NCBI GenBank assembly: GCA_950097015.1
Contig: CATNEN010000025.1
Coordinates: 6,076,001 to 6,140,000, forward strand
Length of the DNA: 64,000 bases
Reading direction: 5' to 3'
Source: Macrostomum hystrix
Lineage: Eukaryota; Animalia; Platyhelminthes
Shown: piece by piece, positions 4,271 through 46,300 of the stretch
Position numbering within the stretch: position 1 is the stretch's first letter
How the letters are laid out: each line of letters starts with the position of its first letter
The notes under the pieces: model-generated
Told to the model about the DNA's origin: nothing
Seen by the model: the letters and a program-made list of their open reading frames with translations, nothing else
Databases searched by the model: none
Program-made: the position numbers and the translations under genes

Positions 4271-4646
4271 TCACATGGCCTGATGATAAGGTGACGGTGG
4301 CGGCAGTCCAGTAGCCGGGTGGGTATGATGCATGGCAACTGGTTGATGATGATGATGATGATGATGGTTGTGATACTGCTGATGGTAGGCGACGCCACCG
4401 CCGCTAGCAGATCCGTATGAGGCGTACTCATAGTGCATTCTGTACTCTGCATCAATCTGCTGCTGCTGCTGCTGAGGGTGCTGTGGATACTGGTGCTGCA
4501 TCAGGTGCTGCTGCTGATGCTGCTGGTAACTAGACTGCTGATAGCTGCCACTATAGTAATCCTTGCCGTCTGTCTCCACGTATTGGCTGTGCTGATGCAG
4601 CTGTTGATGCTGCACTGGATAGTTGTATTGGTGATGAAGCGTCTGT

Positions 4647-4681
<35 letters not shown>

Positions 4682-7600
4682 AACATTTTTCGCTGACGAA
4701 GCCGCAGCTGCTGATGCCGCGGCTGCTGCAGCGGCTGAAGCTGCTAATGAGTCTTGCTGCTGCTGCTGAGGAGTGGAAAGCTGGCTGCTGGGCTTGTACT
4801 GAATGGTGTTGGCGCTCTTAGCAGAGATTTGCACCCCTGTACTGGTCTGCGGTTGCTGCGCCTGCTGTTGTTGTTGCTGATGTGCGTGCGGCTGCTGCTG
4901 CTGCGGCTGCGGCTGCTGATGCTGCTGCATCGGAACAGCTGGATAGGCCATTGCCTGCTGTTGCACCTGTTGGTTGCCGGGTAGAAGGATGCCAGGGTAT
5001 TGCGTGTATTTAAACTTTCTATTAACTCAAACTGAGGATCTGGGAGAGTGACAGCTCAACCTGAAGATATGGGAGTAACAACTCAACCTGAGCATGTGGA
5101 AGAGTGACAGCTCAACCTGAGCATGTGGGAGGGTGACAGCTCAACCTGAGGAATGGGAGAGTGACAGCTCAACCTGAGCATGTGGGAGGGTGACAGCTCA
5201 ACCTGAGGAATGGGAGAGTGACAGCTCAACCTGAGCATGTGGGAGGGTGACAGCTCAACCTGAGGATATGGGAGAGTGACAGCTCAACCTGAGCATGTGG
5301 GAGAGTGACAGCTCAACCTGAGGAATGGGAGAGTGACAGCTCAACCTGAGGAATGGGAGAGTGACAGCTCAACCTGAGCATGTGGGAGGGTGACAGCTCA
5401 ACCTGAGGATACAGGAGAGTGACAGCTCAACCTGAGGATATAGGAGAGTGACAGCTCAACCTGAAGATATGGGAGTAACAACTCAACCTGAGCATGTGGA
5501 AGAGTGACAGCTCAACCTGAGGAATGGGAGAGTGACAGCTCAACCTGAGGAATGGGAGAGTGACAGCTCAACCTGAGCATGTGGGAGGTGACAGCTCAAC
5601 CTGAGGATATGGGAGAGTGACAGCTCAACCTGAGCATGTGGGAGAGTGACAGCTCAACCTGAGGAATGGGAGAGTGACAGCTCAACCTGAGGAATGGGAG
5701 AGTGACAGCTCAACCTGAGCATGTGGGAGGGTGACAGCTCAACCTGAGGATACAGGAGAGTGACAGCTCAACCTGAGGATATAGGAGAGTGACAGCTCAA
5801 CCTGAGGATATGGGAGAGTGACAGCTCAACCTGAGGATATGGGAGAGTGACAGCTCAACCTGAGGATATGGGAGAGTGGCAGCTCAACCTGAGGATATGG
5901 GAGAGTGACAGCTCAACCTGAGGATATGGGAGAGTGACAGCTCAACCTGAGGATATGGGAGAGTGACAGCTCAACCTGAGGATATGGGAGAGTGGCAGCT
6001 CAACCTGAGGATATGGGAGAGTGACAGCTCAACCTGAGGATATGGGAGAGTGACAGGATAACCTGAGCATCTGAGAGATCCAAAGCATAGTACTAACCTG
6101 CATGTGCCCGTGCGCGCCCACACCATTGACTGCCTGATAGTTGATCTGCTGCACGTTGAGCTGGGCATTTACAAATGTATTGTTAACCACCATAGGCTGC
6201 TGCTGTTGCTGTTGCATTGGGGGTTGGGACGGTGGTGGTGGCTGGGGCTGCTGCTGCTGCTGCGATTGCTGATGCTGAGGGTGTCTCATACCGATGGACT
6301 GAAACGGAACTCCCATTACGGGCACATCTTTGCTCAGCTTGTCCAGACTAGCTAAACTGGCGCTGGTGATGTTTCTGCTAGTAGATGCACTACTGCTAGT
6401 AGTAGTATTAACAATAGGCGGCGGTTCTAATCCAACAGGAAACGTTGGCTTAATGTCGACGATAGCAGTATTTTGTACTACAGAGTTCTGCTGTTGTTGT
6501 TGCTGCTGCTGCTGTTGCTGCTTCTGCTGATCCTTTTTTCGTCGCTTACTAGCCCCAGAGGACGACGATTTTGGCGTTGCTGCTGCTGTTGCAGCATTAC
6601 CAGCTGCTGTCGAAGTCGGCGCCGTAGAAGTTGTTAAAGAGGCCTGTGGAAGCTGAGGATGGGCATAGTACTGAGACGGATCATTCATCTTCATCATTGG
6701 CATGGGAGGCGCCGGCTGCAGTGGATAGTTGCATTGCTGCTGAGGTCGCTGCGGCTGATACGGCGGACCTGGTATTCCGACTGCCGGATTAGGCGTCGAT
6801 GCGGATGCCGCAGCGGCGGCGGCTGCTGCAGCTGCAGCGGCGGCGGCGGCGTTCGGATGCGGGCGCTTGCTCCCAGCGGTTGGGCCGACAAGTGGCTGCA
6901 TTGGAGACGGACCGGCGGGATAAGCGCCTTGGAAGTGCTGGTGGGGATGCAGATGCGGATTGGGCATCATTTGCACATGCTGATAGTGCTGCTGATGGGG
7001 ATCGCCGTGGGGATAGCGCCGCATCATGCTGTCCCATTCCTGTTGAGCTTGGGGATTTTCGCTGCTTCCAGTGTCCATGGGATGCGGAGGATGCGCTTGT
7101 AAGGCTGGTGGCGGAGGAGGCGGCAGCGGCGGCGGCGGCTGCATCTGCTGAGGTGCCAGGCCGGCCGACTGGCCAATCTGCATGATGCGCTGCAGTTTCT
7201 CTTCCCGCTTCCGACGCTGTTCAACTGAAATGCCAGCGCTGCCAGCTGCGGCCGCCGCCGCCGCTGCCGCCGCCGCTGCAGCCGCCGCCGATGGGGGATG
7301 CTGATGCTGCTGCGGCTGCTGCTGAGAAGGCATGACAGGCAGGTGAGGAGGTTGTTGAGCTCGTTCAAGCCAGGTCTGATGCCACTGATCCGGGCGCACA
7401 CTATGACCGCTGGCCGCGCACTGACGGCTGCACTCGTTGGCCAGCCGGCTGTGGAAGACGCGCACAGGCGGCTGCGAGTACTGCCCGTAGGCGCAGTGGC
7501 TCGCGCCATTGGACAACTGGGCTGGCGGCATGATTGGCTGCTGCTGCTGCTGCTGCCAGGGTGGCGATGCCGAGAGGTAGTGCTGATGCGGCTGCTGAAA

Positions 7601-10290
7601 AGTTGGACAATGCGAGTGTTTAGAACAGACTCAAACAGTGACATCTGGGCAATAATTATGAACTCTCACCATTGATTCCGACTGACAATAGGCTGCCGCA
7701 GGTGATTTGACAAATTGCTGCTGCTGCTGCTGCGGCTGCTGTTGCTGAAAATGTTGATGATGCTCCACTGGTCCACAATAGTCTGTCACTGGTGCAGCAT
7801 AAGGAGACTGTGGATACTGCTGCGAATGTAGGTGATAAGTAGGTAAAATGTATTCAACAGTCAAACTTCAATCACACTCTTCGACTTGACTTTGCTGAGT
7901 TGCATAATGCACGAACTGTCAAATAATGATGTGCCAGTGCCCACTGCCCAGCTGCATATAGTGCTATTATTATTGCACGAACTGTCAAATAATGATTTGC
8001 CAGTGCCCACTGCCCAGCTGCATATAGTGCTATTATTATTGCACGAACTGTCAAATAATGATGTGCCAGTGCCCACTGCCCAGCTGCATATAGTGCTATT
8101 ATTATTGCACGAACTGTCAAATAATGATGTGCCAGTGCCCACTGCCCAGCTGCATATAGTGCTATTATTATTGCACGAACTGTCAAATAATGATTTGCCA
8201 GTGCCCACTACCCAGCTGCATATAGTGCTATTATTATTGCACGAACTGTCAAATAATGATTTGCCAGTGCCCACTGCCCAGCTGCATATAGTGCTATTAT
8301 TATTGCACGAACTGTCAAATAATGATTTGCCAGTGCCCACTACCCAGCTGCATATAGTGCTATTATTATTGCACGAACTGTCAAATAATGATTTGCCAGT
8401 GCCCACTACCCAGCTGCATATAGTGCTATTATTATTGCACGAACTGTCAAATAATGATTTGCCAGTGCCCACTGCCCAGCTGCATATAGTGCTATTATTA
8501 TTGCACGAACTGTCAAATAATGATTTGCCAGTGCCCACTGCCCAGCTGCATATAGTGCTATTATTAATGCACGAACTGCAGACGACAACACAGACGCAGC
8601 CATTGCGTGGCGCATCTGAAGGCTGTTCAGTCCATGGACTGGGGGGACGCCACACCCACCCTCAATTACCCTAGCTAATGCTGGTACCAATTTAACAGAA
8701 GCAATGTAGAGTCAAGTGTCTCGCTAAAGGACACTTTTTTGCAATCGAATCAGGACTCGAACTCCCGACACTCAATTCGACGCTCTAACCACTAGGCTAC
8801 AACTAGGCAAACTATACTACTTTAGACGATATAGTCAGTAGAAAGTTAGGGTCGACATACACAATAAGCTTTTTTATTAAATTTCTTTGAATGCTCCTTA
8901 CCCTTGGATCGCGTGGTGGTACTGGACGATAAGCAGCGGTGCTTGCCACAGAATTATTAGGCATTGATGCTATGGAAGTCGGAGCTACAAACTGCTGCTG
9001 TTGCTGTGGGGGCAGCTGCTGCTGCTGATGAAAAGTTGTGGGACTGCTATTCGATCCGGGATTCGAACCCCCACCGCCCTGCTGATGCGGCTGCACCAAC
9101 GCGGAAGGCGTGTGAGGCATGGAACCTGGCGTGCAAGGATGCTGCTGCTGCTGCTGAGTGAGCTGAGACGGCAGCGGCAGCGGTGGGGTAGATCGTTCAG
9201 CTTCCTCCTCTTCGTCAGCTGGCACGGGCTCATTGCGGGCCCGCCGAAGCTCCCGACAGTGCAGACGCTCCATGCGGAGTAGGCGGGATGGGTGCAGCTC
9301 GTCATTGCCCTGCAGGTGGCAGCCCTGCTTCATCTCATCGATGACGAGTTCCAGAAGGCAGGACTGCAAAAATAGGCCCATTTCGCGCTCGTTCTCGTTC
9401 CTAGAGGCTGTCATGTTGGCCGTGAAGCGCTCCCAGTCTTCCGCCGAGGGGCCGACAACCATTTCAAAGGCCTGCTGAGACGCGTGTTGCTGGCCGCCAG
9501 CAGTTCCGTTGCCAACGGCACCGACGCTGCCGACTCCGCCGTTGACGACGCCTCCACCGTTAACACCGCCGCCGGATCGATCTTCGCCTAGGCGCTGCCG
9601 ATAGAGCCGATGATCGTCCAGGTAATAGTGGCGACGATTTCGGGAATCCGTGCCGCAGTTGATGGCCACCTGGTTAGTGTCGTCCTGTGCTGAATTCTGC
9701 GCTTCGTACTTCATGTCCTGCATCTCCCAGCCAGGTATGACGTCATCGTTCAGGTAGTCGATTACCTGGATCGAGTTTTCAAGGGTGAGGGAGAAGCTGA
9801 TCATCGCATGAACCAAAGAGCTTCCTATTGATAATATTGTGTCATCACAAACCTTCTTGAGCAGCCTGGCTTTGGATTCAAAGCTGAGTTCGTCCAGTTT
9901 ATTAGCGGCCATCATTTTGGCAATGTGCGGCCGCTTCTCTTGAAAATAAGCCGCCAATTGGTGCTCGGCGTTGGCCATGTTCACATTGGGATCGCCGCCA
10001 CGGACCACGCGCAGCATTCTGGCCAGGATGTCTCGCACAGCGCTAGTATCGCTGCTATCTAGGACGCGTTCCAGGTCAACTAGGCGCACCTTGGCGAAAC
10101 GAAACCGACGCTTGTGATAGACTAGGAAGTACAGCACAGTGGGCAGCTGCCAGTCCTCCAGTTTGCGGACAGTTGAACGGCTGGAACCGCTGTCAGAGTG
10201 ATGAGCAGACAGGTTGGACAGTGGTCCATTCGACAGTGGCCCGTTGGACAGTGGTCCATTGGACAGGGGACCGCCGCTGCTGTGGTCCAT
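4271..10290 (-). CDS. Predicted 4-exon ~1243-aa nuclear protein: N-terminal DDT/WHIM (CECR2/RSF1/dikar-like) module plus Q/P/A-rich C-terminal half with BCL9/Legless-like motifs
   Basis: Exons are 10290-8902 (AGG|GTAAGG), 7819-7670 (TTCGCAG|, ATG|GTGAGA), 7594-6098 (TTTTCAG|, CAG|GTTAGT) and 4966-4271 (CAACAG|, TGA). All junctions are phase 0 and open. By recall, DWQLPTVLYF, LSFESKARLLKKVCD, GTDSRNRRHYYLDDHRLYR and EDWERFTANM..EREMGLFL match the CECR2/RSF1 DDT and WHIM1-3 segments. GISVEQRRKREEKLQRIMQI resembles BCL9 HD2. Confidence 0.72.
5025..6070. repeat. 28-30-bp intronic minisatellite (CTCAACCTGAGGATATGGGAGAGTGACAG)n, about 36 copies
   Basis: Direct tandem array filling almost all of intron 4967-6097. 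Confidence 0.97.
7908..8577. repeat. 66-bp intronic tandem repeat, about 10 copies
   Basis: Period is 66 (TGCACGAACTG at 7908, 7974 and onward). It lies within intron 7820-8901 and abuts a SINE. Confidence 0.97.
8580..8801 (-). mobile_element. tRNA-derived SINE, family 1 (degenerate copy)
   Basis: The minus-strand head TGTAGCCTAGTGGTTAGAGCG...GAGTTCGAGTCC carries Pol III A and B boxes. The body (GGTACCAGCATTAGCT, CAGTCCATGGACTGAAC) is shared with 32622-32818 and 40770-41032. Confidence 0.78.
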
Positions 10291-13200
10291 TGTCAATGGA
10301 CGCCGACTGTTCGATACAGGAGTAAGAAGAGATGCAGCTAGCTTGGTTGGTGGAGACACAGCTTCAGGGGCGCTTCAGGGGCGCTTCAGGGGCGCTTCAG
10401 GTCACAGCGGCGCCACTGGGACGCATTAAGAATTAGTGGAATTATCCCCAGCTGAGCGGTGCTCTGTCGTACTGGGCAGGGCACTGGCTGCAATCGATGA
10501 ACATATTTTTACCCTTAGTTATTTGATTAACATTAAAAATGAACTCGTATCTTGTGTATCATCAATGGCATGCAGACTGCTAACGACATCGCTATCTGTT
10601 GGCCTAAACAACCAAAATTTTTAATTTAATCACTGAATTGACAAAACGTGGAGAAAGGCCCTGACAATAGCGTATAATTAAAATGCAACACCACGCAGTC
10701 TAGACTAGTGGAAATCAATTATTCTGTGCCAAGGTAGACTTTAAAGCATAAATGCTGACAGCAGGGAAGCATGCAATTTTATTACATTCTTGCTTAAATA
10801 TAATGTCCAGTACACAAATGACATTGTTGAATTTATTTCTATATATTTTAATAAGACAAATGTTACTTAGATAAGGAAATGGTAGAACTCTATGTGCTGA
10901 GTGTAGCATTCCTACTAGGCAAAAGCATTATAACGGGCCATAATAACACCGAGCTCAGTTAAATTAGGAAGCTATAGGCAGAGAAATGGAAAGAAGTGGA
11001 GCACACACACACACAGACACCTACCGCACTGCTTCTTAACCCACTTGCGACCAACTTGTGGCAAACTGCCTTACTAATGCCTAGCAGAAGGCAGGACAGA
11101 GTGACAGAGAACGACTAGGAGAGCGACTGAGACAGTCCTCTCTGACAGCTTATATTTCTGCATCTGCATGCGAGGTATCCACCTTGCTTACATCTCTAGC
11201 AAGATAGTTTTATATAGAAAAATAATAAGTCCGCCGCATTTCTGTTTTCACCTCGTCTCACCTCTCACTTAATCTGCATTTAAATACGGCTCGATTGTAA
11301 AGCTGCGCATGGCGCCCCACCCCACTTGCAGTCCAGCCTAGAAAACGACAATATTATATTTCCTTTTGCATCAGCAACATTTCTAACTTTTATTTCACCA
11401 GCACAGATATGTCCGAAATAGAAAATGTGCGCCTCCTTGGGGAAGGCATTGGGCTAGGGTGCGAACTCTCTTTCTGTGCTACTTTAGTTCAGTCTGCATG
11501 GTGCATTTTTACACAACTATTGTGCACCACAACCGACGGAACGCTGAACGAAAGACACGGGAATTTCGGAAAGAACTGTATATATATTTTATATAGGAGA
11601 AAGAAGAGACGCTAAAAAGTTGAACAGGAAAATATTCGCCACCAGAAGATATCCAGCGGAAAGCGAAGAATAATATAAGAAGAAGCCCGAGAAATATAGC
11701 GCCAAGTGTGCAATCGCCTATATCCCAGCCTGAAGCATTTCCTATTACCGTCAGCATATCCACATGTATTTTAACTTAGAGATTCACTGCCCGTTTATAA
11801 ACCGCATAGACTGAAAATCCCTTGGCGTCGTCTGTGCGGAGACAGATTTTTACACAAGCAGCAGCAACAGCAAGGCGCCCTAGGGCTCCTTGCCTCTCCC
11901 AAGGTAGCAGAGGCATAGAGCAGTAACAACAACATAACCAGAAGCCCAAGTAAGAAAGGCACGGAGAATTTGGAGTGGGACAGATCGCTCGGAAAAAGAT
12001 ATGGATGAGGGAAAAATAGATGGAGAGAGGGAAAGGAGAAGACAAACACAGCAGAGGGCCACAACTGCCACGCGACGCTGACGTGTACCTGTCCCTATTT
12101 GAACCATCAAAGTGGCCCATGATAACTAACCTGTGGTAGAGCCAACAAATTTGGCACGACTAAACAGTCAGAGAAAAAGACGAACTGAGGCCGAACCAAA
12201 AATTTCCCAATGGAAAGAAATCAGGACACACAAACCGAGTCTTGTTAGACAAATATCAAGGAAAAAGTCAAACTGCAATTTTACCATCATGTTTTTCTAC
12301 TGGTTAGTTAAAGACATGGAAAACATGGGATCTGAGACGTCTACAGCTTTAAAATGAGAATCTGGGAATTTCGTGTGCAATTTTTAGGATTTGGGAGGTT
12401 GGTGTGTGAGTCTGAGTGTCTGAGAAGTTGGTGATCAAGCTTGAGGATTTGGGATATTAGTGGAAGAGTCTGAGCATCTGGGACATCGGTGTCCGAATTT
12501 GAGGATCTGGGAGCTTGGCGCCGAAGTCTTGGAATCTGAGAGTTTCGTGGCTTTTTGTCAGATAAAATGGAAGATCATGAACTGACAGCTTAATTTTTAA
12601 GTAGCAACTTTGTTATCAGCCATTCTGTCAACGCATAAAAGACAATCAGTTAAACCAAAATTTTACGCACCGCAACACTGGCACGAAGACGAATTACAGC
12701 AGACAATAGAACATAGCCTAAAAAAGAAGCGAGTGGAAAGCAGAAAGCGATTCAAATAGAACCCAGAATGGACTTGTCGGACTAAAACAGCAAGAATAGA
12801 AAAGTTCGGTAAAGGCGTGCGTTGAGTGCGACTTGTCTGCACTCTGTAGTGTAGGCCGAGAAAAGCAGCCCCGGAAAAGCTGTTCTCAACCGGTTCCGCG
12901 GGCAATTATTCCGATTGTTAAATTCTCAGCAGCAGCAGCAGCAGCAGCAGCAAAAACAGGGATGCCATTACAGAGGGAGTATGCGTGAACACGGGTAATT
13001 AAGAAAATATTTCTGCGAGATTTTCGTTGTCGATCAGTCTCTAAGGGTCGTTTGTGGACACTGAGCAAGCCAGTAGTGTACCTCCTCAGGACGGAGAAGC
13101 TTAAGTCTTAAGAGGGAAGATGAAGGGAGAAAAAGAAGGAATATCGGAGAAACTCATAAATGTTTGCCTGCTTGCGAAAGTCCGCTCTCGACAGCCTAAT

Positions 13201-25876: not shown

Positions 25877-27034
25877 TTAGCCATAAATGAAAGGCTGAGA
25901 AGAAAAACTAGAATATATAGGGTGTTGCTAACAGACAAGACAGGGAAATAATTTTGGTAAAGTGCAACAATGCTAGCTTTAGCTAATAGCAACTAGTCTT
26001 CAAAGGGTCATAGTTCACTCATGAGGGACCCTCAAGAGAATTAGTACCTGGCAAAGTAGCTGTGACAAGTTGGGGTCATAGAGAAAAGATGGATATTTCC
26101 TATTTTAGTTTTGATATTGAGGCTGTTGCACTCTCCCAAGACCTTTAAGCAAAGATCCATGTGTGTTGAAAGCTTTTGCTTTGTTGCAATGCTGCAAAAC
26201 CTGAAACAGATTGTACAATAGACCAAGATAGCAATGGCCTCCACTTAAAATTGTCAGGGGGATTTCCTTTCCATTGCCTGACAGTTCTATTTATTTTGTT
26301 TATTTTGAGATGTTAAGCAATACTGAAGAATCTCCTATATTATCTCTAGTTAATATGTATACATAGATTAAGACTTCTGTTGATATGGTAATGATTTAAG
26401 ATGACATTTTTTATTATATCTTTCTACATAAACCTTATCTTTTCAGTGTACCTCTTTCAACTGCATCTACACTACTCTACAATCTGACATAATGACCTAA
26501 ATATATACTCTGATTTAAGCATGGAGTTATGATGATTTTATAATAAAATTAATTTTAATTATTTGACTGCCACAACACCTAAAAAGTTTTGATCATTTAA
26601 ATAGTTGTCACTGCCAACAAAATTAGCTTGTCTTCTAGTATTAAGCCTTATTATTTGTATTTGTTAATTTTAGGTACTAAAGCATTTGTTTGCTCTTTAC
26701 TTTAGTAATGATGCACTGCAAACATTGGTCAATATAACAATGATTAACTTAATCATTATACCAATTGGCAGGTTTAGACCAAATATTGTACTTAAAGCAC
26801 AGCATATAGTCTATTCTTGTCTAAGCAAGGAAATAAACATTAATTTATATGCAGGACATTTGTGTTTTTTAACTCAATAAATGTGTACAGATGCATTCAC
26901 AATGAAAATTAGGAAAATCGAGACAATTGTTTAGCTGTTAAAATATGTTTCTAGTCGAGTTCTTAATTAGGCTCCCATTTTTACTGTTGCATTGCAGTGA
27001 GACATTGAAAAAAAAATTTATAATTACAGAAGCA

Positions 27035-28433
27035 ATGGCATATAACGACAGCCAAAGTGAGACTACACAGCTGCGCAAACTATTTGTTGGCGGCCTATCT
27101 GCCAACATAAGCGATGCTGAGCTGCGAGAGCACTTTAGCAAATACGGTGAACTAGCCGATGTTGTGGTGATGAAAGACCGCGGCACTGGCCGGCCACGCG
27201 GCTTCGGCTTTGTCACCTATTCAGACGAGTCCGGCGTTGACGCTGCTCAGGCTGCCAGGCCGCACATTCTGGACGGTCGCGAAGTGGAAACAAAGCGTGC
27301 TATGCCTCGTACCGAAGCACCTCGAGATGTTAATAACACTCGCGCCGACAAAATGTTTCTCGGTGGCCTAGGCCCAGAGACAACCGAGGAGCATCTGCGC
27401 GAATACTTCAGCCAATTTGGCGAGGTGCAATCTGTTGAAATTGTCATCACTAGGGAAACTGGGAAGCCACGTGGCTTTGGCTTTGTCACTTACCGCGATC
27501 CCGACTCCGTAGACAAGGCCATTCTGCACAAACCGCATACCATCACTGGCAGCCAGCGGGTTGATTGCAAGAAAGCCGTTTCTCGCGAACAGATGGCCAT
27601 TATTCGGTCCAGGAATCAGGGTTCTAGTGGCTATGGAGGCGGCTACGGCGGTAGCTACGGAGGCGGCTATGGCGGCGGCGGATATGGTTATGGAGATGGC
27701 TATGGCAACGGCGGCGGCTACGATGGCTATGGTGGCTATCATCAAAATGGCGATGGCTTTGGCTCCTACGGTGGCCAAGGCTACGGCGGCGGACCTTCAA
27801 AGCCGGGTGGCGGCTTTGGCGGCGGTCCGCAGCGATTTCAACCATATGGCGGCGGCCCCGTTGGCGGCCCCGGACGTGGCGGCTATCCCAGTGGTGTTTA
27901 CCGCGGCGGCAGAGGTAATTCCTTTGCTTTATCGGTGTTGCGGGGTTGTGGCATTTTCTATGTTTCCACAATCTTATATCAATCAAAAGAGATACCGGGG
28001 ACTCTTAGATTGGAATTCAGTTGTTGGTTGCGAAAGCCCAACTGATATTTGTTGAATAGAATGAGAGTGGCTTTTTATAGAATCCTGTGTCAGGTGTCTG
28101 AGTAATCCTACAGGCTATTTGGGGAATCCTAAAGCGGTTATTTATAGAATCCTGTGGGGTTTTTTAGAATCTAGGGAATCCTGAAGAGCCACGACATTAT
28201 CGTAGTTGAGTATCTAAATGAAATCCTCAGGGTCTTGAGTCAAGGGGGACTTTTAATGGGGTAGCTGTGGGATCTTTCGAGTGTAATGTCAAACGGGAAA
28301 TTTTTATTGAAATTTTAAGGAAAATCTTAAATGTATATTGTGACTGGCCTTGATAAAATCATTATTTCATCGTCGAAGGAACGTTAGTAAATGTGTCCTG
28401 TTGTAAATTTCAGGTGGCCGTGACGGATACTAA
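27035..28433 (+). CDS. hnRNP A/B family RNA-binding protein (hnRNP A1/A2-B1/A3, Hrb87F/Hrb98DE-like), 299 aa
   Basis: Exons are 27035-27914 (AGAG|GTAATT) and 28414-28433 (TTTCAG|, ending ...RGGRGGRDGY*). Two RRMs are present (LRKLFVGGLS/RPRGFGFVTY and KMFLGGLG/KPRGFGFVTY), followed by a G/Y-rich low-complexity tail with RGG. An acceptor TTACAG| lies 5 nt before the ATG. Confidence 0.93.
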
Positions 28434-37393: not shown

Positions 37394-40300
37394 TCAGCGC
37401 AGAGACTCGCACACGTCGGCAATGCACTCGGCCATGCGGCCAAGAAGGCAGTAGGTGTTGGCATAGATGCCGTCTGTGCACCTTCGCTCGGCTAGCAGCT
37501 CCGGTGTGAGCAGCTCGGACTCTTCGGCTTCCTCTTCGATGGCTTGTTCGACGGCTGCTGCCTGCTGGTCGACTCCGGTCGCACCGCGGCCGCCGTCCAC
37601 AGAGGCCTTCCGGGCGCCGCCACTGCTGACGCCGCCGGAGCTCATGCGTTTCGGCGACTTTGTGCGCTCCTTGGTCAGCTGGATCTGCCGGATTTTTTTC
37701 GGTCAAGTGTTCAGGGTCGCCAGGTCAAGTGTTCAGGGTTGCCAGGTCATGTTTTCAGGGTTGCCAGGTCATGTGCTCATAGTTGCTGGATCATTGAGTC
37801 AGAATTTTCAGTTCACTGATGTGGGCTTCGGCTGGTCATGGGTTCAGGATCTCACAGGTCATGGGTTCAGGATCTCACAGGTCATTGGTTCAGGATCTCA
37901 CAGGTCATTGGTTCAGGATCTCACAGGTCATTGGTTCAGGATCTCACAGGTCATGGGTTCAGGATCTCACAGGTCATGGGTTCAGGATCTCACAGGTCAT
38001 TGGTTCAGGATCTCACAGGTCATGGGTTCAGGATCTCACAGGTCATTGGTTCAGGATCTCACAGGTCATTGGTTCAGGATCTCACACGCAAAAGAAATGG
38101 GAATTTACCAGATGACCACCCCTTACCGATCCGCGAGTCTGCTCAGTTTTGAGACTAGTCGGCTTGCCGCTCTCCTTAGACACCGTGGACTTCTGCTTGT
38201 CAGCCTTTGTCCGTTTAGTGGTGCCCGCTGTGAAATTAGCGCGATGGACGTGCAATATTTGGATAGAACTGTACGAATAATATAATCAACTGATATAATT
38301 GACCTATGCGGTGAAAATGAACATACTGTTCACTCGTACTATAGATTGCAATGGCTATTGTTACTTTTTGAGATTAGTCTGACACGGCATTAGACGTAGT
38401 TTTTAAAAAAGCTACAATTTTTAGGCGGAAAAGCTCAATCGGGTGTTAGACATACTAGCTTCCTTTTAATTGGACTGCTCTGTCTATCGATTCTTCGTTT
38501 GTTGGTCTCACCTAACTTTAATGGCCCTCACCCAGACTGCCTTTTTGATTGGCCGTCACCCAGACTGCCTTTTTGATTAGCCCTCACCCAGACTGCCCTT
38601 TTTATTGGCCGTCACCCAGACTGCCCTTTGATTAGCCCTCACCCAGACTGCCTTTTGATTGGCCGTCACCCAGACTGCCTTTTTGATTGGCCCTCACCCA
38701 GACTGCCCTTTGATTAGCCCTCACCCAGACTGCCTTTTGATTAGCCCTCACCCAGACTGCCTTTTGATTAGCCCTCACCCAGACTGCCTTTTTGATTGGC
38801 CCTCACCCAGACTGCCCTTTGATTAGCCCTCACCCAGACTGCCTTTTGATTGGCCTTCACCCAGACTGCCCTTTGATTAGCCCTCACCCAGACTGCCTTT
38901 TGATTAGCCCTCACCCAGACTGCCTTTTGATTAGCCCTCACCCAGACTGCCTTTTGATTAGCCCTCACCCAGACTGCCTTTTGATTGGCCCTCACCCAGA
39001 CTGCCTTTTGATTAGCCCTCACCCAGACTGCCTTTTGATTGGCCCTCACCCAGACTGCCTTTTGATTGGCCTTCACCCAGACTGCCCTTTGATTAGCCCT
39101 CACCCAGACTGCCTTTTTATTGGCCCTCACCCAGACTGCCTTTTGATTAGCCCTCACCCAGACTGCCTTTTGATTGGCCCTCGCCCAGACTACATTTTTA
39201 TTGGCCCTCACCCAGACTGCCTTTTTGATTAGCCCTCACCCAGACTGCCTTTTTGATTGGCCGTCACCCAGACTGCCTTTTTGATTAGCCCTCACCCAGA
39301 CTGCCCTTTTTATTGGCCGTCACCCAGACTGCCCTTTGATTAGCCCTCACCCAGACTGCCTTTTGATTGGCCGTCACCCAGACTGCCTTTTTGATTGGCC
39401 CTCACCCAGACTGCCCTTTGATTAGCCCTCACCCAGACTGCCTTTTTGATTAGCCCTCGCCCAGACTGCCTTTTGATTAGCCCTCACCCAGACTGCCTTT
39501 TGATTGGCCCTCACCCAGACTGCCTTTTTGATTAGCCCTCACCCAGACTGCCCTTTGATTGGCCCTCACCCAGACTGCCTTTTGATTAGCCCTCACCCAG
39601 ACTGCCTTTTGATTGGCCCTCACCCAGACTGCCTTTTGATTGGCCCTCACCCAGACTGCCTTTTGATTGGCCCTCACCCAGACTGCCTTTTGATTAGCCC
39701 TCACCCAGACTGCCTTTTTGATTAGCCCTCGCCCAGACTGCCTTTTGATTGGCCCTCACCCAGACTGCCTTTTTGATTAGCCCTCACCCAGACTGCCTTT
39801 TTGATTAGCCCTCACCCAGACTGCCCTTTGATTGGCCCTCACCCAGACTGCCTTTTGATTAGCCCTCACCCAGACTGCCTTTTGATTGGCCCTCACCCAG
39901 ACTGCCTTTTGATTGGCCCTCACCCAGACTGCCTTTTGATTGGCCCTCACCCAGACTGCCTTTTGATTGGCCCTCACCCAGACTGCCTTTTGATTAGCCC
40001 TCACCCAGACTGCCTTTTGATTGGCCCTCACCCAGACTGCCTTTTGATTACCCTCCACCCAGACTGCCTTTTGATTGGCCCTCACCCAGACTGCCTTTTG
40101 ATTGGCCCTCACCCAGACTGCCTTTTGATTGACCATTTTTAAGACTACTTTTGCAGCTGCGAAATGCGCCTGGCTACTGAAAGTAGTTAAACTGTATTTG
40201 CTTTATTGGTGTTAAGAAAACTGCTAGCTGCGTGCTGCTGATACCTTTGCCATCCCGAGCTGCGGTGCCTGTTAAATGATGCTTATTTGTCTTTTTTTAA

Positions 40301-43300
40301 AGTGCTAAGTTATCTACATGTACGTGTTGCATTATTAAAGTCACACTTCTTATCTAAAGCGGATGGTGTTAATAGTGACAGGTAAAGTTTGAACTCTTGT
40401 TTTCTGAAACTTCTAAAAATTTTACTCTCGAGATTTTTTCTCAAGTAATAGATTTCAAATAAACATGAAGAATTTTTCTCTTTGCAAGTTTTTTAATTCG
40501 CGCCAAAGTTTGTTAGAACTTTTGCGCCGTGATGTTGACTTTACAGATGCAGATGAAAGTTGTCCTCGACGACAAGACAAATTACGATAGCGTATGTGAA
40601 TTCAATATAGACAGAAGTGCAATTGCTAATGATGTAAATAAAATTTACAATTGTCCACTCATGGACAACCAGTATTAGAAGAATGTTGCATTCACGGTCT
40701 GTGGGAAATTCAATACATATACTTTAAACCCAAGATAAGAGCATTGGCTTTTTTTAACCAAAATTAATAATAATTAATAACTGATTACACCTGCCCCAAT
40801 TGGGCCAGATGTGCAGCCGACAGCACAGCCGCAGCCATTGCGCGGCGCATCTGAAGACTGCGTACAGCTGTTCAGTCCATGGACTGGGGGGACCCACACC
40901 CACCTTCAATTATCCCAGCTAATGCTGGTACCCATTCAACAGCTGGGTGACACAAACTGTTTCAGTGGAGTCGGGAATCGAACCCCCGATCTTCAAGTCG
41001 TGAGTCCGACGCCCTAACCACTAGGCTACACCCTCTTTAACCAAGGATTCAGTAAAATTGCATTGGATGAGATGCGAGAGCAATTGTAATTTTAAGTATC
41101 AGGCCCCCCACTGAAAAAAACTTTAACCCAAAATTACTTTCTTGCTTACACACGTCCTTCTATTACTGGTGGTCCAATTTGAGTGCATAGCTAGTGACCT
41201 CAAGAGTGACTCCAAGCATTGTGACAGGATAAATATGACAGAATTGACACTTAGCGTCGGGTGCTTTGGCAGTTGTAAATGCTAGAAATCTGTCATAAAG
41301 GTTTTGTAATAGAAGCCGGCCTAATCGCTGAGAATCGGATACCAAGTGAGGCTGGTTCAGAAGTGCTCTCTCGGCTGCTATCGATAGACGCCGCTTCATC
41401 GCTGAAGTCTTTCAGTGAAGCAAGCGCACCGACATCTGACTGACTGCCGTCGGACAAGTCTGCACTGCACCCAACTGTTGGATCTTTGGGTGCGTTTTTG
41501 ATCCAGAAGTTACAGTCTCAGAGCTACTACAGAGTCCTAGCCGACTAGTTCTGAATCACCAGGTGTAAATTCCACTCACTTCGGCATTTTTTATTGATAA
41601 ATAAGCCCGCAACCCATTGTTTAAGATTACGATGAAAAGGGTTACAGAAAGCAAGCACTTCTATATTTGATGGAATGCTAAGATATAAAACAGGTTTAGT
41701 TCCCGCATCCGCTAGAAATCACTCGCAAACTACCAATATACTACTGCAAGCAGTCTATAATGCAGTGCCAAAAACAAGCAAACAAAAAGTAATTAATTGC
41801 TATTAATTAAGCCATGCAAAACAATGCATTTGAGCTAAAGATATAGGAAAAAATCATATAATACTAATGCTAGGAAACGACTCAGGAAAAAGTAACGTGA
41901 TTCTCGAGTGACTCATCAGGAGGTAATCAACTTTTACTAAACTGCACATCTAGTATTTAAAGAGAAGAGAACTTCGTTAGTAATTTTGGCGCCAGTTTAA
42001 ATACTCATTTTCAGGCTAGAGAAAGCGATAAGAACTCACTTGGATCAGGGAAGTCCATGTCCATCTCTGGCAGCCTGCGAATCATCCGCTGGTGGTACCA
42101 GTCGTTGTAGATCTTGTCCATCGTTTCCATGACAACTCCGTAACTAATATGAATGATTGGGAGTGCAAGTAATTCGTTTTAAGCTTTTATATACGCTTGC
42201 ATATATGCTTGCATAAGGAAGGACAGTGTTAGTTAATCCAGTGACTACTAACTCAGAGGGGCGCAATGCGCTTGATTCGGGGAAAACAGTTGAAAAACGC
42301 TAACAGTACATTTGCGCTAAAAGTACTCGAGAAGTACAAAAGCACAAGTCTGTTTTCTAACAGTAGTAAGACCACGCGAAAATTTCAAATGCCTGCATTT
42401 TATTTTTTCCGTATCTCCTAAAATATTCAACCAATCGCAATGAATATCTCGACGATGTTGACTCTGAAATTCCCAGTGGGAAAAACAGCATGGTCTTCCT
42501 ACTGTTCTACTGTTCATCCATTGTATCATTTTGAAGGGCCTTTTGTGGTATACCAAAAAATGGCGGATTGTTGCATGCATTGAATACGCTTGAGGTCATT
42601 GACTGGCTACAGTGGCATGGCGGTAGTTGCCTCACCACATCAAGTGTTGCCTGGCCCTCAGCTCCGCTCTGGGCAGGTCAACGCCAAACGACACTCGATT
42701 CACCGCGGCAAACAACCGGCCGCTGAAATCCTCCCGCTTCGCCTGCCGATCCTCTTCCAGGCTGAGGATTCTGTCGCGTAGGCTGGACACACTCAGATCC
42801 CACTCGGGCGTTGGCTCAGCCGCGGCACCAGCGGCCGCAGCCTCGACATCCTTGTGCAGCCGTTTCAACAGATTCAGCGTGTCGAGGGTGCAGCTGAGGC
42901 GGGGATTTCTACGAAGGAAGATCTCCTGCTCGGTGATGTAGGCGTCTATGGGAGTCATCGGCCGCTCGGGCGCCTGCAAACGGTTACGACAGGTAGGTGG
43001 TTCAGGGAAACCAATGTTTTAAAGGACCAAGCTACCAAGGACCAAGCCACCAAGGCCCAAGCCACCAAGGCCCAAGCCACCAAGGCCCAAGCCACCAAGG
43101 ACCAAGCCACCAAGGCCCAAGCTACCAAGGCCCAAGCTACCAAGGACCAAGCTATCAAGGACCAAGCCACCAAGGCCCAAGCTACCAAGGCCCAAGCTAC
43201 CAAGGACCAAGCCACCAAGGACCAAGCCACCAAGGCCCAAGCTACCAAGGCCCAAGCTACCAAGGACCAAGCTATCAAGGACCAAGCCACCAAGGACCAA

Positions 43301-46300
43301 GCCACCAAGGAACAAGCAACCAAGGCCCAAGCCACCAAGACCCAAGCCAACCAAAGGACCAAGCTACCAAGGACAAAGCTACCAAGGACCAAGCTATCAA
43401 GGACCAAGCCACCAAGGACCAAGTCACCAAGGCCCAAGCTACCAAGGCCCAAGCTACCAAGGACCAAGCTACCAAGGACCAAGCCACTAAGGAACAAAAA
43501 ATCCATACGATGTTAGCCGTGTGAAACAATGATGCCTGTATGCAGCTCCAGCATTACACACGAACTAGTGAAATATTTTAGCTTTTAATGACAATTTAAA
43601 GGTCGGAGAGTACCCGATGTTGAGAGGGTTAGAAAATAGTCGAGGATTGCTATCCCTAAGACAGGGAAAAGCGAAAAATCACAGTCCTTCGTAAATCCCC
43701 AACGTCTTATATTCCCAAACGTCTTGGAATCCCCAAGGTCTTGGAATCCCCAAGGTCTTGGAATCCCCAAGGTCTTGGAATCCCCAAGGTCTTGGAATCC
43801 CCAAGGTCTTGGAATCCCCAAGGTCTTGGAATCCCCAAGGTCTTGGAATCCCCAAGGTCTTGGAATCCCCAAGGTCTTGGAATCCCCAAGGTCTTGGAAT
43901 CCCCAAGGTCTTGGAATCCCCAAGGTCTTGGAATCCCCAAGGTCTTGGAATCCCCAAGGTCTTGGAATCCCTAACGTCTTGGAATTCCTAAGGTCTTGGA
44001 ACCCCCGACGTTTTATAATCCAGATGTTGAAGCGAAGCCACCAAGGACCAAGCTACCAAGGACCAAGCTATCAAGGACCAAGCCACCAAGGCCCAAGCTA
44101 CCAAGGCCCAAGCTACCAAAGACCAAGCTACCAAGGACCAAGCTACCAAGGCCCAAGCTACCAAGGACCAAGCCACCAAGGCCCAAGCTACCAAGGCCCA
44201 AGCTACCAAGGACCAATTAAGCCACCAAGGCCCAAGCCACCAAGGACCAAGCCACCAAGGACTAAGCCACCAAGGACCAAGCCACCAAGGACTAAGCCAC
44301 CAAGGCCCAAGCCACCAAGGACCAAGCCACCAAGGACCAAGCCACCAAGGCCCAAGCCACCAAGGCCCAAGCTACCAAGTACCAAGCTATCAAGGACCAA
44401 GCCACCAAGGCCCAAGCTACCAAGGCCCAAGCTACCAAGGACCAAGCCACCAAGGACCAAGCCACCAAGGCCCAAGCTACCAAGGCCCAAGCTACCAAGG
44501 ACCAAGCTATCAAGGACCAAGCCACCAAGGCCCAAGCTACCAAGGCCCAAGCTACCAAGGACCAAGCTACCAAGGACCAAGCCACTAAGGAACAAAAAAA
44601 TCCATACGATGTTAGCCCACGGACTACTCAAGTAGATGTTAGCCCACGGACTATCTACTAGTGGTCCTTGTGTTAGCCGTGTGAAACAATGATGCCTGTA
44701 TGCAGCCCCAGCGTTACACACGAACTAGTGAAATATTTTAGTTTTTAATGACAATTTTAAGCACTGTAATCTAGAAAACGTCCTCCAAACTTGCCTGCAT
44801 TCCGTCTAGGATCTCGTCCAATAGCGCGGCGACAATCCTCGCCGCCGTCTGCCGCCGCAGCCGGGCCTCCAGCTCGGTCCGCTTGCCGGCCGTGGCGTCC
44901 TCCTGCACGGCGATGCCCCGCAGGGTGACAACCAGGCGTGCGCCGCCGCACACCACAGGCGTTGTCTCCAGCTGCCATTGCTCTGCAAACAAGCCCGGCT
45001 TGTCCGACTTGAAAATGAAGGGAAAGTGAAGCGACTCGCCAGGTAGGAGGGCGCCGCTGCCTGTGTCGAAGTAGAACCGGCGCGGATTCTCCTGGACTAG
45101 GCCAAAAGGATTCGCTTTTGGTAGCTTCTGCAAGCAAATGGGTTAGTTGCCGTGGCGCTGATGTAGTGTAAGCTGACAGTGTTTATTTAGAAGCCTATCG
45201 TCCTAAAACTCTTTTAACAAACCTTTCACCGCAAGCACCAAGCCAACAAGGACCAAGCCAACAAGGACCAAGCAACTACGGACCAAGCTACCTCGGACCA
45301 ATCCACTAAAGGAACAAGCTAGCAAGGAACAAGCTACCAACGAACAAGCTACCAAGGAACAAGCTACCAAGGAACAAGCTACCAAGGAACAAGCTACCAA
45401 GGAACAAGCTACCAAGGAACAAGCTACCAAGGAACAAGCTACCTCGGACCAATCCACTAAAGGAACAAGCTAGCAAGGAACAAGCTACCAAGGAACAAGC
45501 TACCAAGGAACAAGCTACCTCGGACCAATCCACTAAAGGAACAAGCTAGCAAGGAACAAGCTACCAAGGAACAAGCTACCAAGGAATAAGCTACACCAAG
45601 GACCAATCCACTAAGTAGCAAGTTACTAAGGACCAAGCTACCAAGGACCAAGCTACCAAGCACCAAGTCTTCAAAGATCTTAAAATTCTTTAAACAAACC
45701 TTCCACCGATAAAATAGTACAGTGGACCCGTCATTTTCAATGTTAAGACATTGCGAGGTCGGCTTGCCGGCTGGCGTCTCCAGGATGACGCGGGCCTCGA
45801 TGCCGACGGTGTCCTGGTAGGAGGTCGGGTCACCGAGCCAGCGGGCGGGCTGGCCGCCGAACAGCAGGGATGGTCCGACCACCAGTGTACCGTCGGGCGC
45901 TTGCCTGCGCATGGTCGGAATTAGAATGGGATTGGGAATTAGAAGAGATCGGTTGCCACCGGTGGTTGGAGAGTACCCGATGTTGAGAGGGTTAGAAAAT
46001 AGTCGAGGATTGCTATCCCTAAGACAGGGAAAAGCGAAAAATCACAGTCCTTCGTAAATCCCCAACGTCTTATATTCCCAAACGTCTTGGAATCCCCGAC
46101 GTCTTATATTCCCAAACGTCTTGGAATCCCCGACGTCTTATATTCCCAAACGTCTTGGAATCCCCGACGTCTTATATTCCCAAACGTCTTGGAATCCCCG
46201 ACGTCTTGGAATCCCCAACGTTTTGGAATCCCAAGGTCTTGGAATCCCCAAGGTCTTGGAATCCCTAAGCTCTTGGAATCCCCAAGGTCTTGCAATCCCT

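What the first reader, a model, noticed from the sequence alone, without database searches (positions are those of the whole stretch)
4271..10290. Candidate fusion of a CECR2-like DDT-WHIM module with a BCL9/Legless-like beta-catenin adaptor
Seen: four exons join in phase 0 into one open frame. Exon 1 (~9330-10165) has four segments in the order and pattern of the DDT, WHIM1, WHIM2/WSD and WHIM3 elements of CECR2/RSF1. Exon 3 carries GISVEQRRKREEKLQRIMQI (7169-7234) and then AQQEWDSMMRRY (~7016-7051). Established: DDT-WHIM modules dock ISWI ATPases. BCL9 HD2 (human GLSQEQLEHRERSLQTLRDIQ; fly LTPQQRQHREEQLAKIKKM) binds beta-catenin and is followed by the Trp-containing HD3. Inference: one protein could bring ISWI remodelling directly to beta-catenin/TCF targets. 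I know of no described protein with this architecture.
Basis: partly seen in the sequence, partly recalled or inferred. Interest (0 to 1): 0.85.

Follow-up and report, generated by a model that had tools for sequence, protein, structure and literature searches.

The report
Flatworm BCL9/Legless with DDT-WHIM head
This is a real, spliced flatworm gene for the Wnt co-activator BCL9/Legless, and its N-terminus carries a folded module of the kind that docks ISWI chromatin remodellers; the same combination occurs in other flatworms, a ribbon worm, chelicerates and dragonflies but not in fruit-fly Legless, and I found no paper describing it.

Summary
The minus-strand gene 4271-10290 is real and spliced. 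Transcript-like contigs of two public runs carry every junction, including 8902/7819.

The N-terminal module (aa 39-315) is a conserved folded domain.
- AlphaFold models are confident: pLDDT 85 and pTM 0.80 for the horseshoe-crab orthologue.
- The only solved structure covering the whole module is Ioc3 of yeast ISW1a (Z 10.8, 210 residues).
- Predicted-structure neighbours are DDT/WHIM1/WSD proteins (TM about 0.7).
- Two orthologues just reach Pfam's DDT or WHIM1 cut-off. The window's own sequence gives no Pfam hit.

The C-terminal half carries HD1-, HD2- and HD3-like islands in BCL9 order. In the window each is too diverged to score on its own.

The same N-module heads proteins with a bona fide Pfam BCL9 domain in a nemertean, horseshoe crabs, spiders, ticks, a sea spider and Odonata. 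It is absent from D. melanogaster Legless. So this is the Macrostomum BCL9/Legless orthologue with an old protostome architecture, not a lineage-specific fusion. ISWI docking is inferred, not shown. No paper in the searched library links BCL9 to DDT or WHIM.

The parts
9853..10290 (-). Coding exon 1a (aa 1-146), ATG at 10290-10288
   Evidence: An in-frame stop lies upstream. The N-terminus matches M. lignano P0002. The exon is covered by spliced contigs that extend 90 nt beyond 10300.
9766..9852 (-).
   Evidence: The joint 9763/9851 (cut +2) is present in X4, X5 and X2 contigs. All 22 homologues have a gap here.
8902..9765 (-). Coding exon 1b (aa 147-434)
7820..8901 (-). Intron 2 (1082 nt), with a 66-bp x 10 tandem array at 7908-8578
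   Evidence: The joint 7819/8902 skips 1082 nt in X4 and X5. Tandem array.
7670..7819 (-). Coding exon 2 (aa 435-484), Q-rich
7595..7669 (-). Intron 3 (75 nt)
   Evidence: The joint 7594/7670 is present in X4 and X5.
6098..7594 (-). Coding exon 3 (aa 485-983), holds the HD1-, HD2- and HD3-like islands
4967..6097 (-). Intron 4 (1131 nt), almost filled by a 29-bp x 37 tandem array (5026-6078)
   Evidence: The joint 4964/6096 (cut +2) is present in X4 and X5. Tandem array.
4271..4966 (-). Coding exon 4 (aa 984-1214 plus stop), Q/H-rich tail
9259..10176 (-). N-terminal DDT-WHIM-like module (aa 39-315, interrupted by intron 1)
   Evidence: Local family HMM, E 5e-96. AF2 model: pLDDT 72.7, pTM 0.65. 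Ioc3 2y9z_B: Z 8.6 over 224 residues. Atlas neighbours are DDT/WHIM1 clusters.
10000..10158 (-). DDT-like helices (aa 45-97)
   Evidence: The aligned block in orthologue P0041 scores 22.6 bits on Pfam DDT, cut-off 22. Eight of 24 family members give sub-threshold DDT hits.
9736..9891 (-). WHIM1-like helix (aa 134-156, spans intron 1)
   Evidence: P0036 scores 19.2 bits on Pfam WHIM1, cut-off 19.1. Nine of 24 members hit WHIM1. The window has a weak KIAA2026_hel hit here.
9304..9672 (-). WSD-like part: a small sheet around the G.D...YY.DD.RLYR motif, a Gly-rich loop, then W...E..L helices (aa 178-300)
   Evidence: Invariant columns G, D, Y, D, R, L, Y, W, E, L. Strands and helices appear in the model. 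There is only a weak Pfam WSD hit, in P0044 (E 0.38).
7367..7465 (-). HD1-like island (aa 528-560)
   Evidence: Conserved among the Macrostomum proteins. It is the best HD1-HMM position in the protein, but weak: -1.8 bits, reached by 21 of 200 shuffles.
7157..7234 (-). HD2-like island (aa 605-630)
   Evidence: Conserved among the Macrostomum proteins. It is the best HD2-HMM position but not significant (-4.3 bits). The paralogue P0002 scores 9.3 bits, reached by 0 of 200 shuffles. No Pfam BCL9 hit.
7013..7048 (-). HD3-like island (aa 667-678): a Trp with an aromatic residue 7 positions on
   Evidence: Sequence. Schistosoma has a similar island that scores above nearly all shuffles. Not retained in the M. 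lignano model P0001.

Best explanation
The locus encodes the BCL9/Legless orthologue of a Macrostomum flatworm: 1214 aa from five exons, transcribed and spliced as one mRNA. The protein is a long, Q/P/A-rich disordered scaffold with four conserved elements in fixed order. First is an N-terminal folded module of about 230 structured residues with the DDT-WHIM fold of ISWI accessory subunits such as Ioc3, Acf1/BAZ, CECR2 and RSF1. It is followed by short HD1-like (Pygo-binding), HD2-like (beta-catenin-binding) and HD3-like (ChiLS-binding) helices. This architecture is not a local fusion. It is shared with BCL9 homologues of trematodes, cestodes, a nemertean, chelicerates and palaeopteran insects, and is missing from D. 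melanogaster Legless. It is therefore at least as old as the protostome ancestor and was later lost in some lineages. Shown here: the gene model and its splicing, family-wide conservation of the module, its fold, and its co-occurrence with a bona fide BCL9 domain. Inferred (about 0.4): the module binds ISWI's HAND-SANT-SLIDE region and/or linker DNA, so that in these animals the Wnt enhanceosome scaffold brings an ISWI remodeller to TCF/beta-catenin targets.
For: Splicing: contigs of X4 and X5 join 10300-9853 | 9765-8902 | 7819-7670 | 7594-7331, and 6098 | 4966, all at GT..AG introns.

Taxon and orthologues: the closest proteins are M. lignano fragments with the same N-module plus HD1- and HD2-like islands. 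An all-library phmmer search finds the module at the N-terminus of 1000-2270-aa proteins of trematodes, cestodes, a monogenean and Tubulanus polymorphus.

Link to BCL9: the Tubulanus protein has Pfam BCL9 with E 1.4e-12. Tachypleus and Nymphon 'Protein BCL9' share the module. A local HMM finds it in 43 of 156 collected proteins, including spider, tick and odonate 'protein BCL9 homolog' entries. All but the Nymphon entry (P0036, '-') have Pfam BCL9 on record. D. melanogaster legless has no hit even at E 100.

Fold: AF2 gives pLDDT 85.2 and pTM 0.80 for Tachypleus and 72.7 and 0.65 for the window. The exhaustive PDB comparison puts Ioc3 (2y9z_B) first for Tachypleus (Z 10.8, 210 residues, model 17-238). 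For the window model it is the only hit spanning both halves (Z 8.6, 224 residues). ESM-Atlas shape neighbours are DDT, WHIM1, WSD, RSF1, Acf1-like and KIAA2026 clusters, with TM 0.68-0.71 over about 225 residues.

Sequence profiles: Pfam DDT scores 22.6 bits (cut-off 22) in P0041 and WHIM1 scores 19.2 bits (cut-off 19.1) in P0036. Sub-threshold hits in the right order occur in 8-9 of 24 members.

HD2 residues: four of the five beta-catenin hot-spot positions (H358, R359, L366, I369, L373; PMC9698307) are conservatively kept in the window (K, R, I, I; the fifth is Ala), using the alignment.
Against: The window's own sequence gives no Pfam DDT, WHIM1, WSD or BCL9 hit. It gives no PDB sequence hit for the N-module or for HD1/HD2.

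Against arthropod-trained HMMs its HD1, HD2 and HD3 are not better than shuffles: 21, 89 and 34 of 200 shuffles reach the observed score. For HD3 the best HMM position is not even the candidate island (aa 1139-1143 instead of 667-678). Membership therefore rests on orthology by the N-module and on collinearity.

Foldseek against PDB found nothing. VIA Z-scores of 8.6-10.8 lie in the range the tool calls middling for helical proteins. For the window model, CH-domain chains score slightly higher over the first 115 residues.

There is no PHD finger or bromodomain, which most DDT-WHIM proteins carry. No ISWI or beta-catenin interaction was tested. The RNA evidence comes from one study, and the kind of run is not on record.
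Confidence: 0.72

Rival explanations
1. The gene is a BCL9/Legless orthologue, but its N-terminal module no longer has anything to do with ISWI. It would be a diverged DDT-WHIM-fold domain used for another partner or for DNA or nucleosome contact, much as the vertebrate KIAA2026 helical domain is not known as an ISWI partner.
For: Sequence similarity to Pfam DDT, WHIM1 and WSD is only at or below threshold. KIAA2026_hel scores comparably (best E 3.7e-4), with an Atlas TM of 0.58. There is no reader domain. No binding data exist.
Against: From general knowledge of the families, every characterised DDT-WHIM protein (Ioc3, Itc1, Acf1/BAZ, BPTF, CECR2, RSF1, plant DDT proteins) is an ISWI partner. 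The best solved match is Ioc3 taken from an ISW1a complex.
Confidence: 0.3
2. The HD1, HD2 and HD3 resemblances in the window are chance matches in a Q/R/E-rich disordered protein. The gene would be a DDT-WHIM protein unrelated in function to BCL9 that shares only the N-module with BCL9 homologues.
For: There is no Pfam BCL9 hit in the window or in any flatworm member. The window's motif scores are within the shuffle range. The ungapped PSSM test was uninformative.
Against: The best-scoring HD1 and HD2 positions are exactly the islands conserved among Macrostomum paralogues. P0002's HD1 and HD2 beat all 200 shuffles, as do cestode HD1 (11 bits) and most trematode HD3. The order N-module, HD1, HD2, HD3 is the same as in Tubulanus and Tachypleus. 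No other family shares the N-module.
Confidence: 0.12
3. Two neighbouring genes, an N-module gene and a BCL9-like gene, are joined only by read-through or mis-assembled contigs.
For: The run kind is not on record, the contigs are de Bruijn assemblies, and both runs come from one study.
Against: One contig in each of two runs carries three precise GT..AG joints in phase 0, from the N-module into the HD1 island. The same two-part architecture occurs in independent gene sets of four animal groups.
Confidence: 0.03

Closest known systems
Legless (D. melanogaster) / human BCL9 and BCL9L
   Same: A long disordered scaffold with short helices HD1, HD2 and HD3 in that order. HD2 carries the basic pair and the hydrophobic heptad. 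The window's protein shares an orthology-grade N-module with arthropod proteins that align to fly legless over HD1-HD2.
   Different: Fly Legless has no trace of the N-terminal DDT-WHIM module. Human BCL9 was not tested here; from memory its N-terminus is disordered. The flatworm HD motifs are far more diverged: no Pfam BCL9 hit, and HD3 has one aromatic residue instead of the F/Y doublet described in PMC5352222.
'Protein BCL9 homolog' of chelicerates and Odonata, and Tubulanus polymorphus XP_074659835.1
   Same: The same full architecture: N-terminal module, then HD1, HD2 and HD3. These are the true counterparts of the window's gene.
   Different: They keep canonical HD1 and HD2, and all but the Nymphon protein (P0036) have Pfam BCL9 on record. 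They are 1700-2050 aa long and lack the Gly-rich loop inside the module.
Ioc3 (yeast ISW1a), CECR2, RSF1, Acf1/BAZ, BPTF: DDT-WHIM accessory subunits of ISWI
   Same: The same fold over about 210-225 residues and the same order of DDT, WHIM1 and WSD-like blocks, including the G.D...YW..D.RLY.E motif.
   Different: There is no PHD finger, bromodomain, WAC or MBD domain. Sequence similarity is only at Pfam threshold in the best orthologues and below it in the window. The partner protein is unknown.
KIAA2026 (BRD10) helical domain, Pfam PF23450
   Same: Weak profile hits over the DDT-like and WHIM1-like parts. Atlas shape match with TM 0.58.
   Different: KIAA2026 carries a bromodomain and no BCL9 motifs. 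The scores are below the Pfam cut-off (best 21.3 bits against 27.8).

Membership tests
BCL9/Legless | HD2, the beta-catenin-binding helix (Pfam PF11502) | tested here: inconclusive
   There is no Pfam hit in the window at E up to 10. The local HD2 HMM picks aa 609-626 as its best position but scores only -4.3 bits, reached by 89 of 200 shuffles. Four of five hot-spot positions are kept. The orthologous island of M. lignano P0002 scores 9.3 bits (0 of 200 shuffles). Orthologues in Tubulanus and arthropods pass Pfam.
BCL9/Legless | HD1, the Pygo PHD-binding element, upstream of HD2 | tested here: inconclusive
   An island with VF...LAN sits at aa 528-560, 75 residues before HD2. The HMM scores it -1.8 bits, reached by 21 of 200 shuffles. 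P0002 and the cestodes score 3.8-11.5 bits (0 of 200 shuffles). There is no PDB HD1 hit.
BCL9/Legless | HD3: an invariant Trp with an F/Y doublet downstream (PMC5352222) | tested here: inconclusive
   A Trp is present with a single Tyr at +7, followed by Pro. A Schistosoma island of the same form beats nearly all shuffles. The island is absent from the M. lignano model P0001.
BCL9/Legless | Orthology to proteins with a bona fide BCL9 domain | tested here: met
   The N-module matches Tubulanus P0013 with E 1.2e-6 by phmmer over the whole library. The family HMM scores the window at E 5e-96 and chelicerate and odonate BCL9 homologues at 1e-64 to 1e-93. The motif order is the same.
DDT-WHIM module of ISWI accessory subunits | DDT domain (Pfam PF02791) | tested here: inconclusive
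   The window gives no hit. Orthologue P0041 scores 22.6 bits against a cut-off of 22. Eight of 24 members hit with E up to 1, always on the first helices.
DDT-WHIM module of ISWI accessory subunits | WHIM1 motif (PF15612) after DDT | tested here: inconclusive
   The window gives no WHIM1 hit, only KIAA2026_hel at E 0.04 in that place. P0036 scores 19.2 bits against a cut-off of 19.1. Nine of 24 members hit.
DDT-WHIM module of ISWI accessory subunits | WSD / WHIM2-3 motifs (PF15613) | tested here: not met
   There is only one weak hit (P0044, E 0.38) at the expected place. The motif pattern is visible by eye in alignment A1, but no profile supports it.
DDT-WHIM module of ISWI accessory subunits | Three-dimensional fold as in Ioc3 (PDB 2Y9Z chain B) | tested here: met
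   Tachypleus model: Z 10.8, rmsd 3.8 A, 210 residues, rank 1 of 48,161 chains. Window model: Z 8.6, 224 residues, the only full-span hit. Atlas gives TM 0.68-0.71 to DDT, WHIM1 and WSD clusters.
DDT-WHIM module of ISWI accessory subunits | Physical binding to ISWI (HAND-SANT-SLIDE) | not testable with these tools
   No multimer prediction or experiment is available here.
DDT-WHIM module of ISWI accessory subunits | An accompanying chromatin-reader domain (PHD or bromodomain), as in BAZ, BPTF, CECR2 and RSF1 | tested here: not met
   No such Pfam domain is found in any exon product.

The most novel reading that the evidence does not exclude
The ancestral protostome, and perhaps bilaterian, BCL9/Legless was itself an ISWI accessory subunit. 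Its N-terminal DDT-WHIM module would dock ISWI while HD1, HD2 and HD3 hold Pygo, beta-catenin and ChiLS, so that Wnt-dependent nucleosome sliding was hard-wired into the enhanceosome scaffold. Flies, and by memory vertebrates, would then have lost that link.
Probability: 0.35. Interest if true: 0.8.

Novelty: new variant of a known kind. Interest (0 to 1): 0.62.

Why it matters
BCL9/Legless has been treated as a string of short docking helices in a disordered chain, a picture built on flies and mammals. This locus and its relatives show that in many protostomes the same scaffold starts with a large folded domain of the type that defines ISWI remodelling complexes. If the domain binds ISWI, it provides a direct and testable physical route from beta-catenin/Pygo to nucleosome remodelling at Wnt targets. 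It would also be a case where the two main model systems lost an ancestral part of the pathway. Macrostomum lignano is open to RNAi and transgenesis, and spiders and horseshoe crabs keep canonical HD1 and HD2 next to the module. The question can therefore be tested directly. At the least, an unannotated conserved domain of about 230 residues in BCL9 homologues now has a structural assignment.

Tried and rejected
- Pfam on the raw ORFs and on exon pieces gave no DDT, WHIM or BCL9 hit, only a weak KIAA2026_hel.
- Sequence searches of PDB found nothing relevant. I tried the N-module, the HD2/HD3 piece, the HD1 piece and the family profile.
- Foldseek against PDB found nothing for either model. 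Only the exhaustive VIA comparison and the Atlas shape search were informative.
- An ordered three-motif test with ungapped PSSMs first timed out. It then proved uninformative because Q-rich flanking columns attract the poly-Q tracts, so I do not use its p-values.
- Language-model feature searches gave DDT/WHIM clusters, but at scores under 0.9, so they are leads only.
- Literature searches for BCL9 with WHIM, with 'DDT domain', with planarian and with Nematostella found nothing on this architecture.
- The scan's earlier notes hold nothing under BCL9 or DDT.
- A tRNA-like stretch in intron 2 is not called by ARAGORN.
I could not run HH-type profile-profile comparison with DDT/WHIM families, because no such sequences were at hand.
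Full report
**Gene model and transcription**

On the minus strand four long open frames lie between 4271 and 10359. By sequence they join in phase 0 at GT..AG introns.

I laid contigs of four public runs on 4900-10300. Two runs, X4 and X5, are from one study. Each has about 48 million letters in about 180,000 contigs, which looks like transcriptome assemblies, though the kind of run is not on record.
- Each holds a contig of about 1866 nt that covers 10300-9853, 9765-8902, 7819-7670 and 7594-7331. It skips exactly 87, 1082 and 75 nt, with CT..AC ends on the plus strand.
- Each also holds a 498-nt contig that joins 6098 to 4966.

The 29 residues it would encode are matched by no homologue.

The mRNA has five coding exons and encodes 1214 aa rich in Q (16%), A (11%) and P (11%). 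The ATG at 10290 follows an in-frame stop, and the N-terminus matches a Macrostomum lignano protein. Contigs break at the Ala/Gln-coding repeats inside exon 3. HD1 and HD2 are therefore linked by the open frame of one exon, not by a single contig.

**Organism**

The nearest proteins (58-65% identity by BLASTP; up to 79% over matched stretches by phmmer) are M. lignano gene-model fragments. The window is therefore from a Macrostomum flatworm whose species I did not determine. Earlier notes of the scan on start codons supplied by a spliced leader (s1-402511, s1-408126) fit that, but I did not test them.

**The N-terminal module**

*Distribution.* A phmmer search of 1.84 billion representatives with aa 31-338 found 14 proteins. 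They are:
- M. lignano fragments;
- long uncharacterised proteins of trematodes (Paragonimus, Clonorchis/Opisthorchis, Schistosoma, Echinostoma, Calicophoron), cestodes (Hymenolepis, Hydatigera) and a monogenean;
- a 1927-aa protein of the nemertean Tubulanus polymorphus;
- one weak hit (P0016, E 5.7e-4), which carries CBM_4_9 and PKD domains and looks unrelated.

In the long proteins, apart from P0016, the match is at the N-terminus.

Searching with the Tubulanus module found Tachypleus and Nymphon 'Protein BCL9'. Searching with the Tachypleus HD1-HD2 region collected 148 arthropod BCL9 homologues, of which 120 were listed, including D. melanogaster legless.

A local HMM of the module then hit 43 of the 156 proteins in hand:
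- Present: all the flatworm and nemertean proteins, horseshoe crabs, spiders, ticks, the sea spider, two Odonata and, in part, a mayfly.
- Absent: 102 other arthropod homologues that do have HD1, mostly neopteran insects. For fly legless there is no hit even at E 100 with filters off.

Where the module is present, HD1 sits at a median position of 479. Where it is absent, HD1 sits at 183.

*Conservation and fold.* The 23-sequence alignment has 11 invariant columns in the pattern expected of DDT, WHIM1 and WSD blocks.

| Test | Tachypleus module | Window module |
|---|---|---|
| AlphaFold2 | pLDDT 85.2, pTM 0.80 | pLDDT 72.7, pTM 0.65 |
| Ioc3 (2y9z_B), all 48,161 PDB representatives | rank 1, Z 10.8, rmsd 3.8 A, 210 residues, model 17-238; next best covers only about 110 residues | rank 5, Z 8.6, 224 residues; the only chain spanning both halves; CH-domain chains reach Z 9.6-9.9 on the first 115 residues |
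| ESM-Atlas shape search | TM 0.68-0.71 over about 225 residues | TM 0.48-0.50 over about 235 residues |

- The low-confidence parts of the window model are the intron-coded stretch and a Gly-rich loop.
- Foldseek against PDB was blank for both models.
- The Atlas neighbours for Tachypleus are clusters named or annotated DDT, WHIM1, WSD, RSF1 and WAC-DDT-WSD, with a KIAA2026 cluster at TM 0.58. The window model finds DDT, WHIM1 and WSD clusters.

*Pfam.* The profiles agree at the margin. DDT scores 22.6 bits (cut-off 22) in the Parasteatoda protein and WHIM1 scores 19.2 bits (cut-off 19.1) in Nymphon. Sub-threshold DDT and WHIM1 hits fall in the correct order in 8-9 of 24 members. WSD gives a single weak hit. 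The window's own sequence gives none of these.

I conclude that the module is a diverged DDT-WHIM domain. The fold evidence is good, and the sequence-homology evidence is moderate.

**The BCL9 half**

The Tubulanus protein has Pfam BCL9 at 553-588 (E 1.4e-12). All the arthropod proteins have it on record. These proteins also have canonical HD1 and HD3 in order.

In the window the corresponding islands are aa 528-560, 605-630 and 667-678. HD1 and HD2 are the only blocks outside the module that are conserved among the three Macrostomum proteins.

I scored HMMs trained on the Pfam-positive homologues against the flatworm proteins and 200 shuffles of each. The figure in brackets is the number of shuffles out of 200 that reach the observed score.

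| Protein | HD1 | HD2 | HD3 |
|---|---|---|---|
| Window | -1.8 bits (21), at the HD1 island | -4.3 bits (89), at the HD2 island | -3.5 bits (34), not at the island |
| M. lignano P0002 | 3.8 bits (0) | 9.3 bits (0) | no hit |
| Cestodes | 11.2-11.5 bits (0) | -3.3 bits (29) | not significant |
| Trematodes | no hit | -1.2 to -2.8 bits (4-17) | 0.5-5.7 bits (0-2) |

By the HMM alignment, the window keeps four of the five BCL9 positions that contact beta-catenin (H358, R359, L366, I369, L373; PMC9698307) as K, R, I and I. The fifth is Ala.

HD3 should have an invariant Trp and an F/Y doublet (PMC5352222). The window has the Trp and one Tyr.

Membership in the BCL9/Legless family therefore rests on orthology through the N-module and on collinearity, not on the window's motifs alone.

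**Mechanism**

Shown: one mRNA, one protein, a folded DDT-WHIM-type head, and BCL9-type docking islands behind it.

Inferred from what is established for Legless/BCL9 (PMC5352222): the islands tether Pygo, beta-catenin and ChiLS.

Inferred from what is established for DDT-WHIM proteins (general knowledge of Ioc3, Acf1, CECR2 and RSF1): the head contacts ISWI and/or linker DNA.

I put the ISWI step at about 0.4. The main alternative is that the head has another partner.

**Novelty**

The architecture already exists in public protein sets, several named 'protein BCL9 homolog'. The window is not unique, and 'fusion' is the wrong word for it. I found no paper linking BCL9 to DDT or WHIM, and Pfam does not annotate the domain. 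The structural assignment, and the point that fly Legless lacks an old part of the protein, appear to be new. Deuterostomes and cnidarians were not sampled.

Noticed in passing
window 9766-9852: An 87-nt in-frame GT..AG intron lies inside what reads as one open exon. Read-through would insert 29 residues into a conserved helix.
   Followed up: yes
window 5026-6078 and 7908-8578: Two introns of this gene are largely tandem arrays: 29 bp x 37 copies (90% matches) fills intron 4, and 66 bp x 10 copies (98% matches) lies in intron 2.
   Followed up: partly
window 8621-8698 (intron 2), with a tRNA-like stretch at about 8740-8812: A short element has very high summed contig depth (about 930-1170) and many variant contigs in X4 and X5. 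It is also seen in X1 and X2, so it is probably a dispersed, expressed repeat. ARAGORN calls no tRNA here.
   Followed up: partly
P0007, P0008, P0010 and related trematode orthologues: Trematode orthologues keep the N-module and the HD2- and HD3-like islands but give no HD1 hit at all. Cestodes and Macrostomum keep HD1. The Pygo-binding element may have been lost in trematodes.
   Followed up: partly
P0001-P0006 (M. lignano, UniRef): The M. lignano counterparts are fragmentary or frame-shifted gene models. They carry unrelated automatic names (osa, histone acetyltransferase, DEK_C, SAP, Clr5, bHLH) and no Pfam domain on record.
   Followed up: no
window 26945-28045 (+): An ORF with what look by eye like two RRM domains and a Gly/Tyr-rich tail, in the style of hnRNP A/B (read from the translation, no profile run).
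   Followed up: no
window 38768-39232, 42854-46829, 55948-57129: Long tandem-repeat tracts give open frames on both strands. They are probably satellites and not genes.
   Followed up: no
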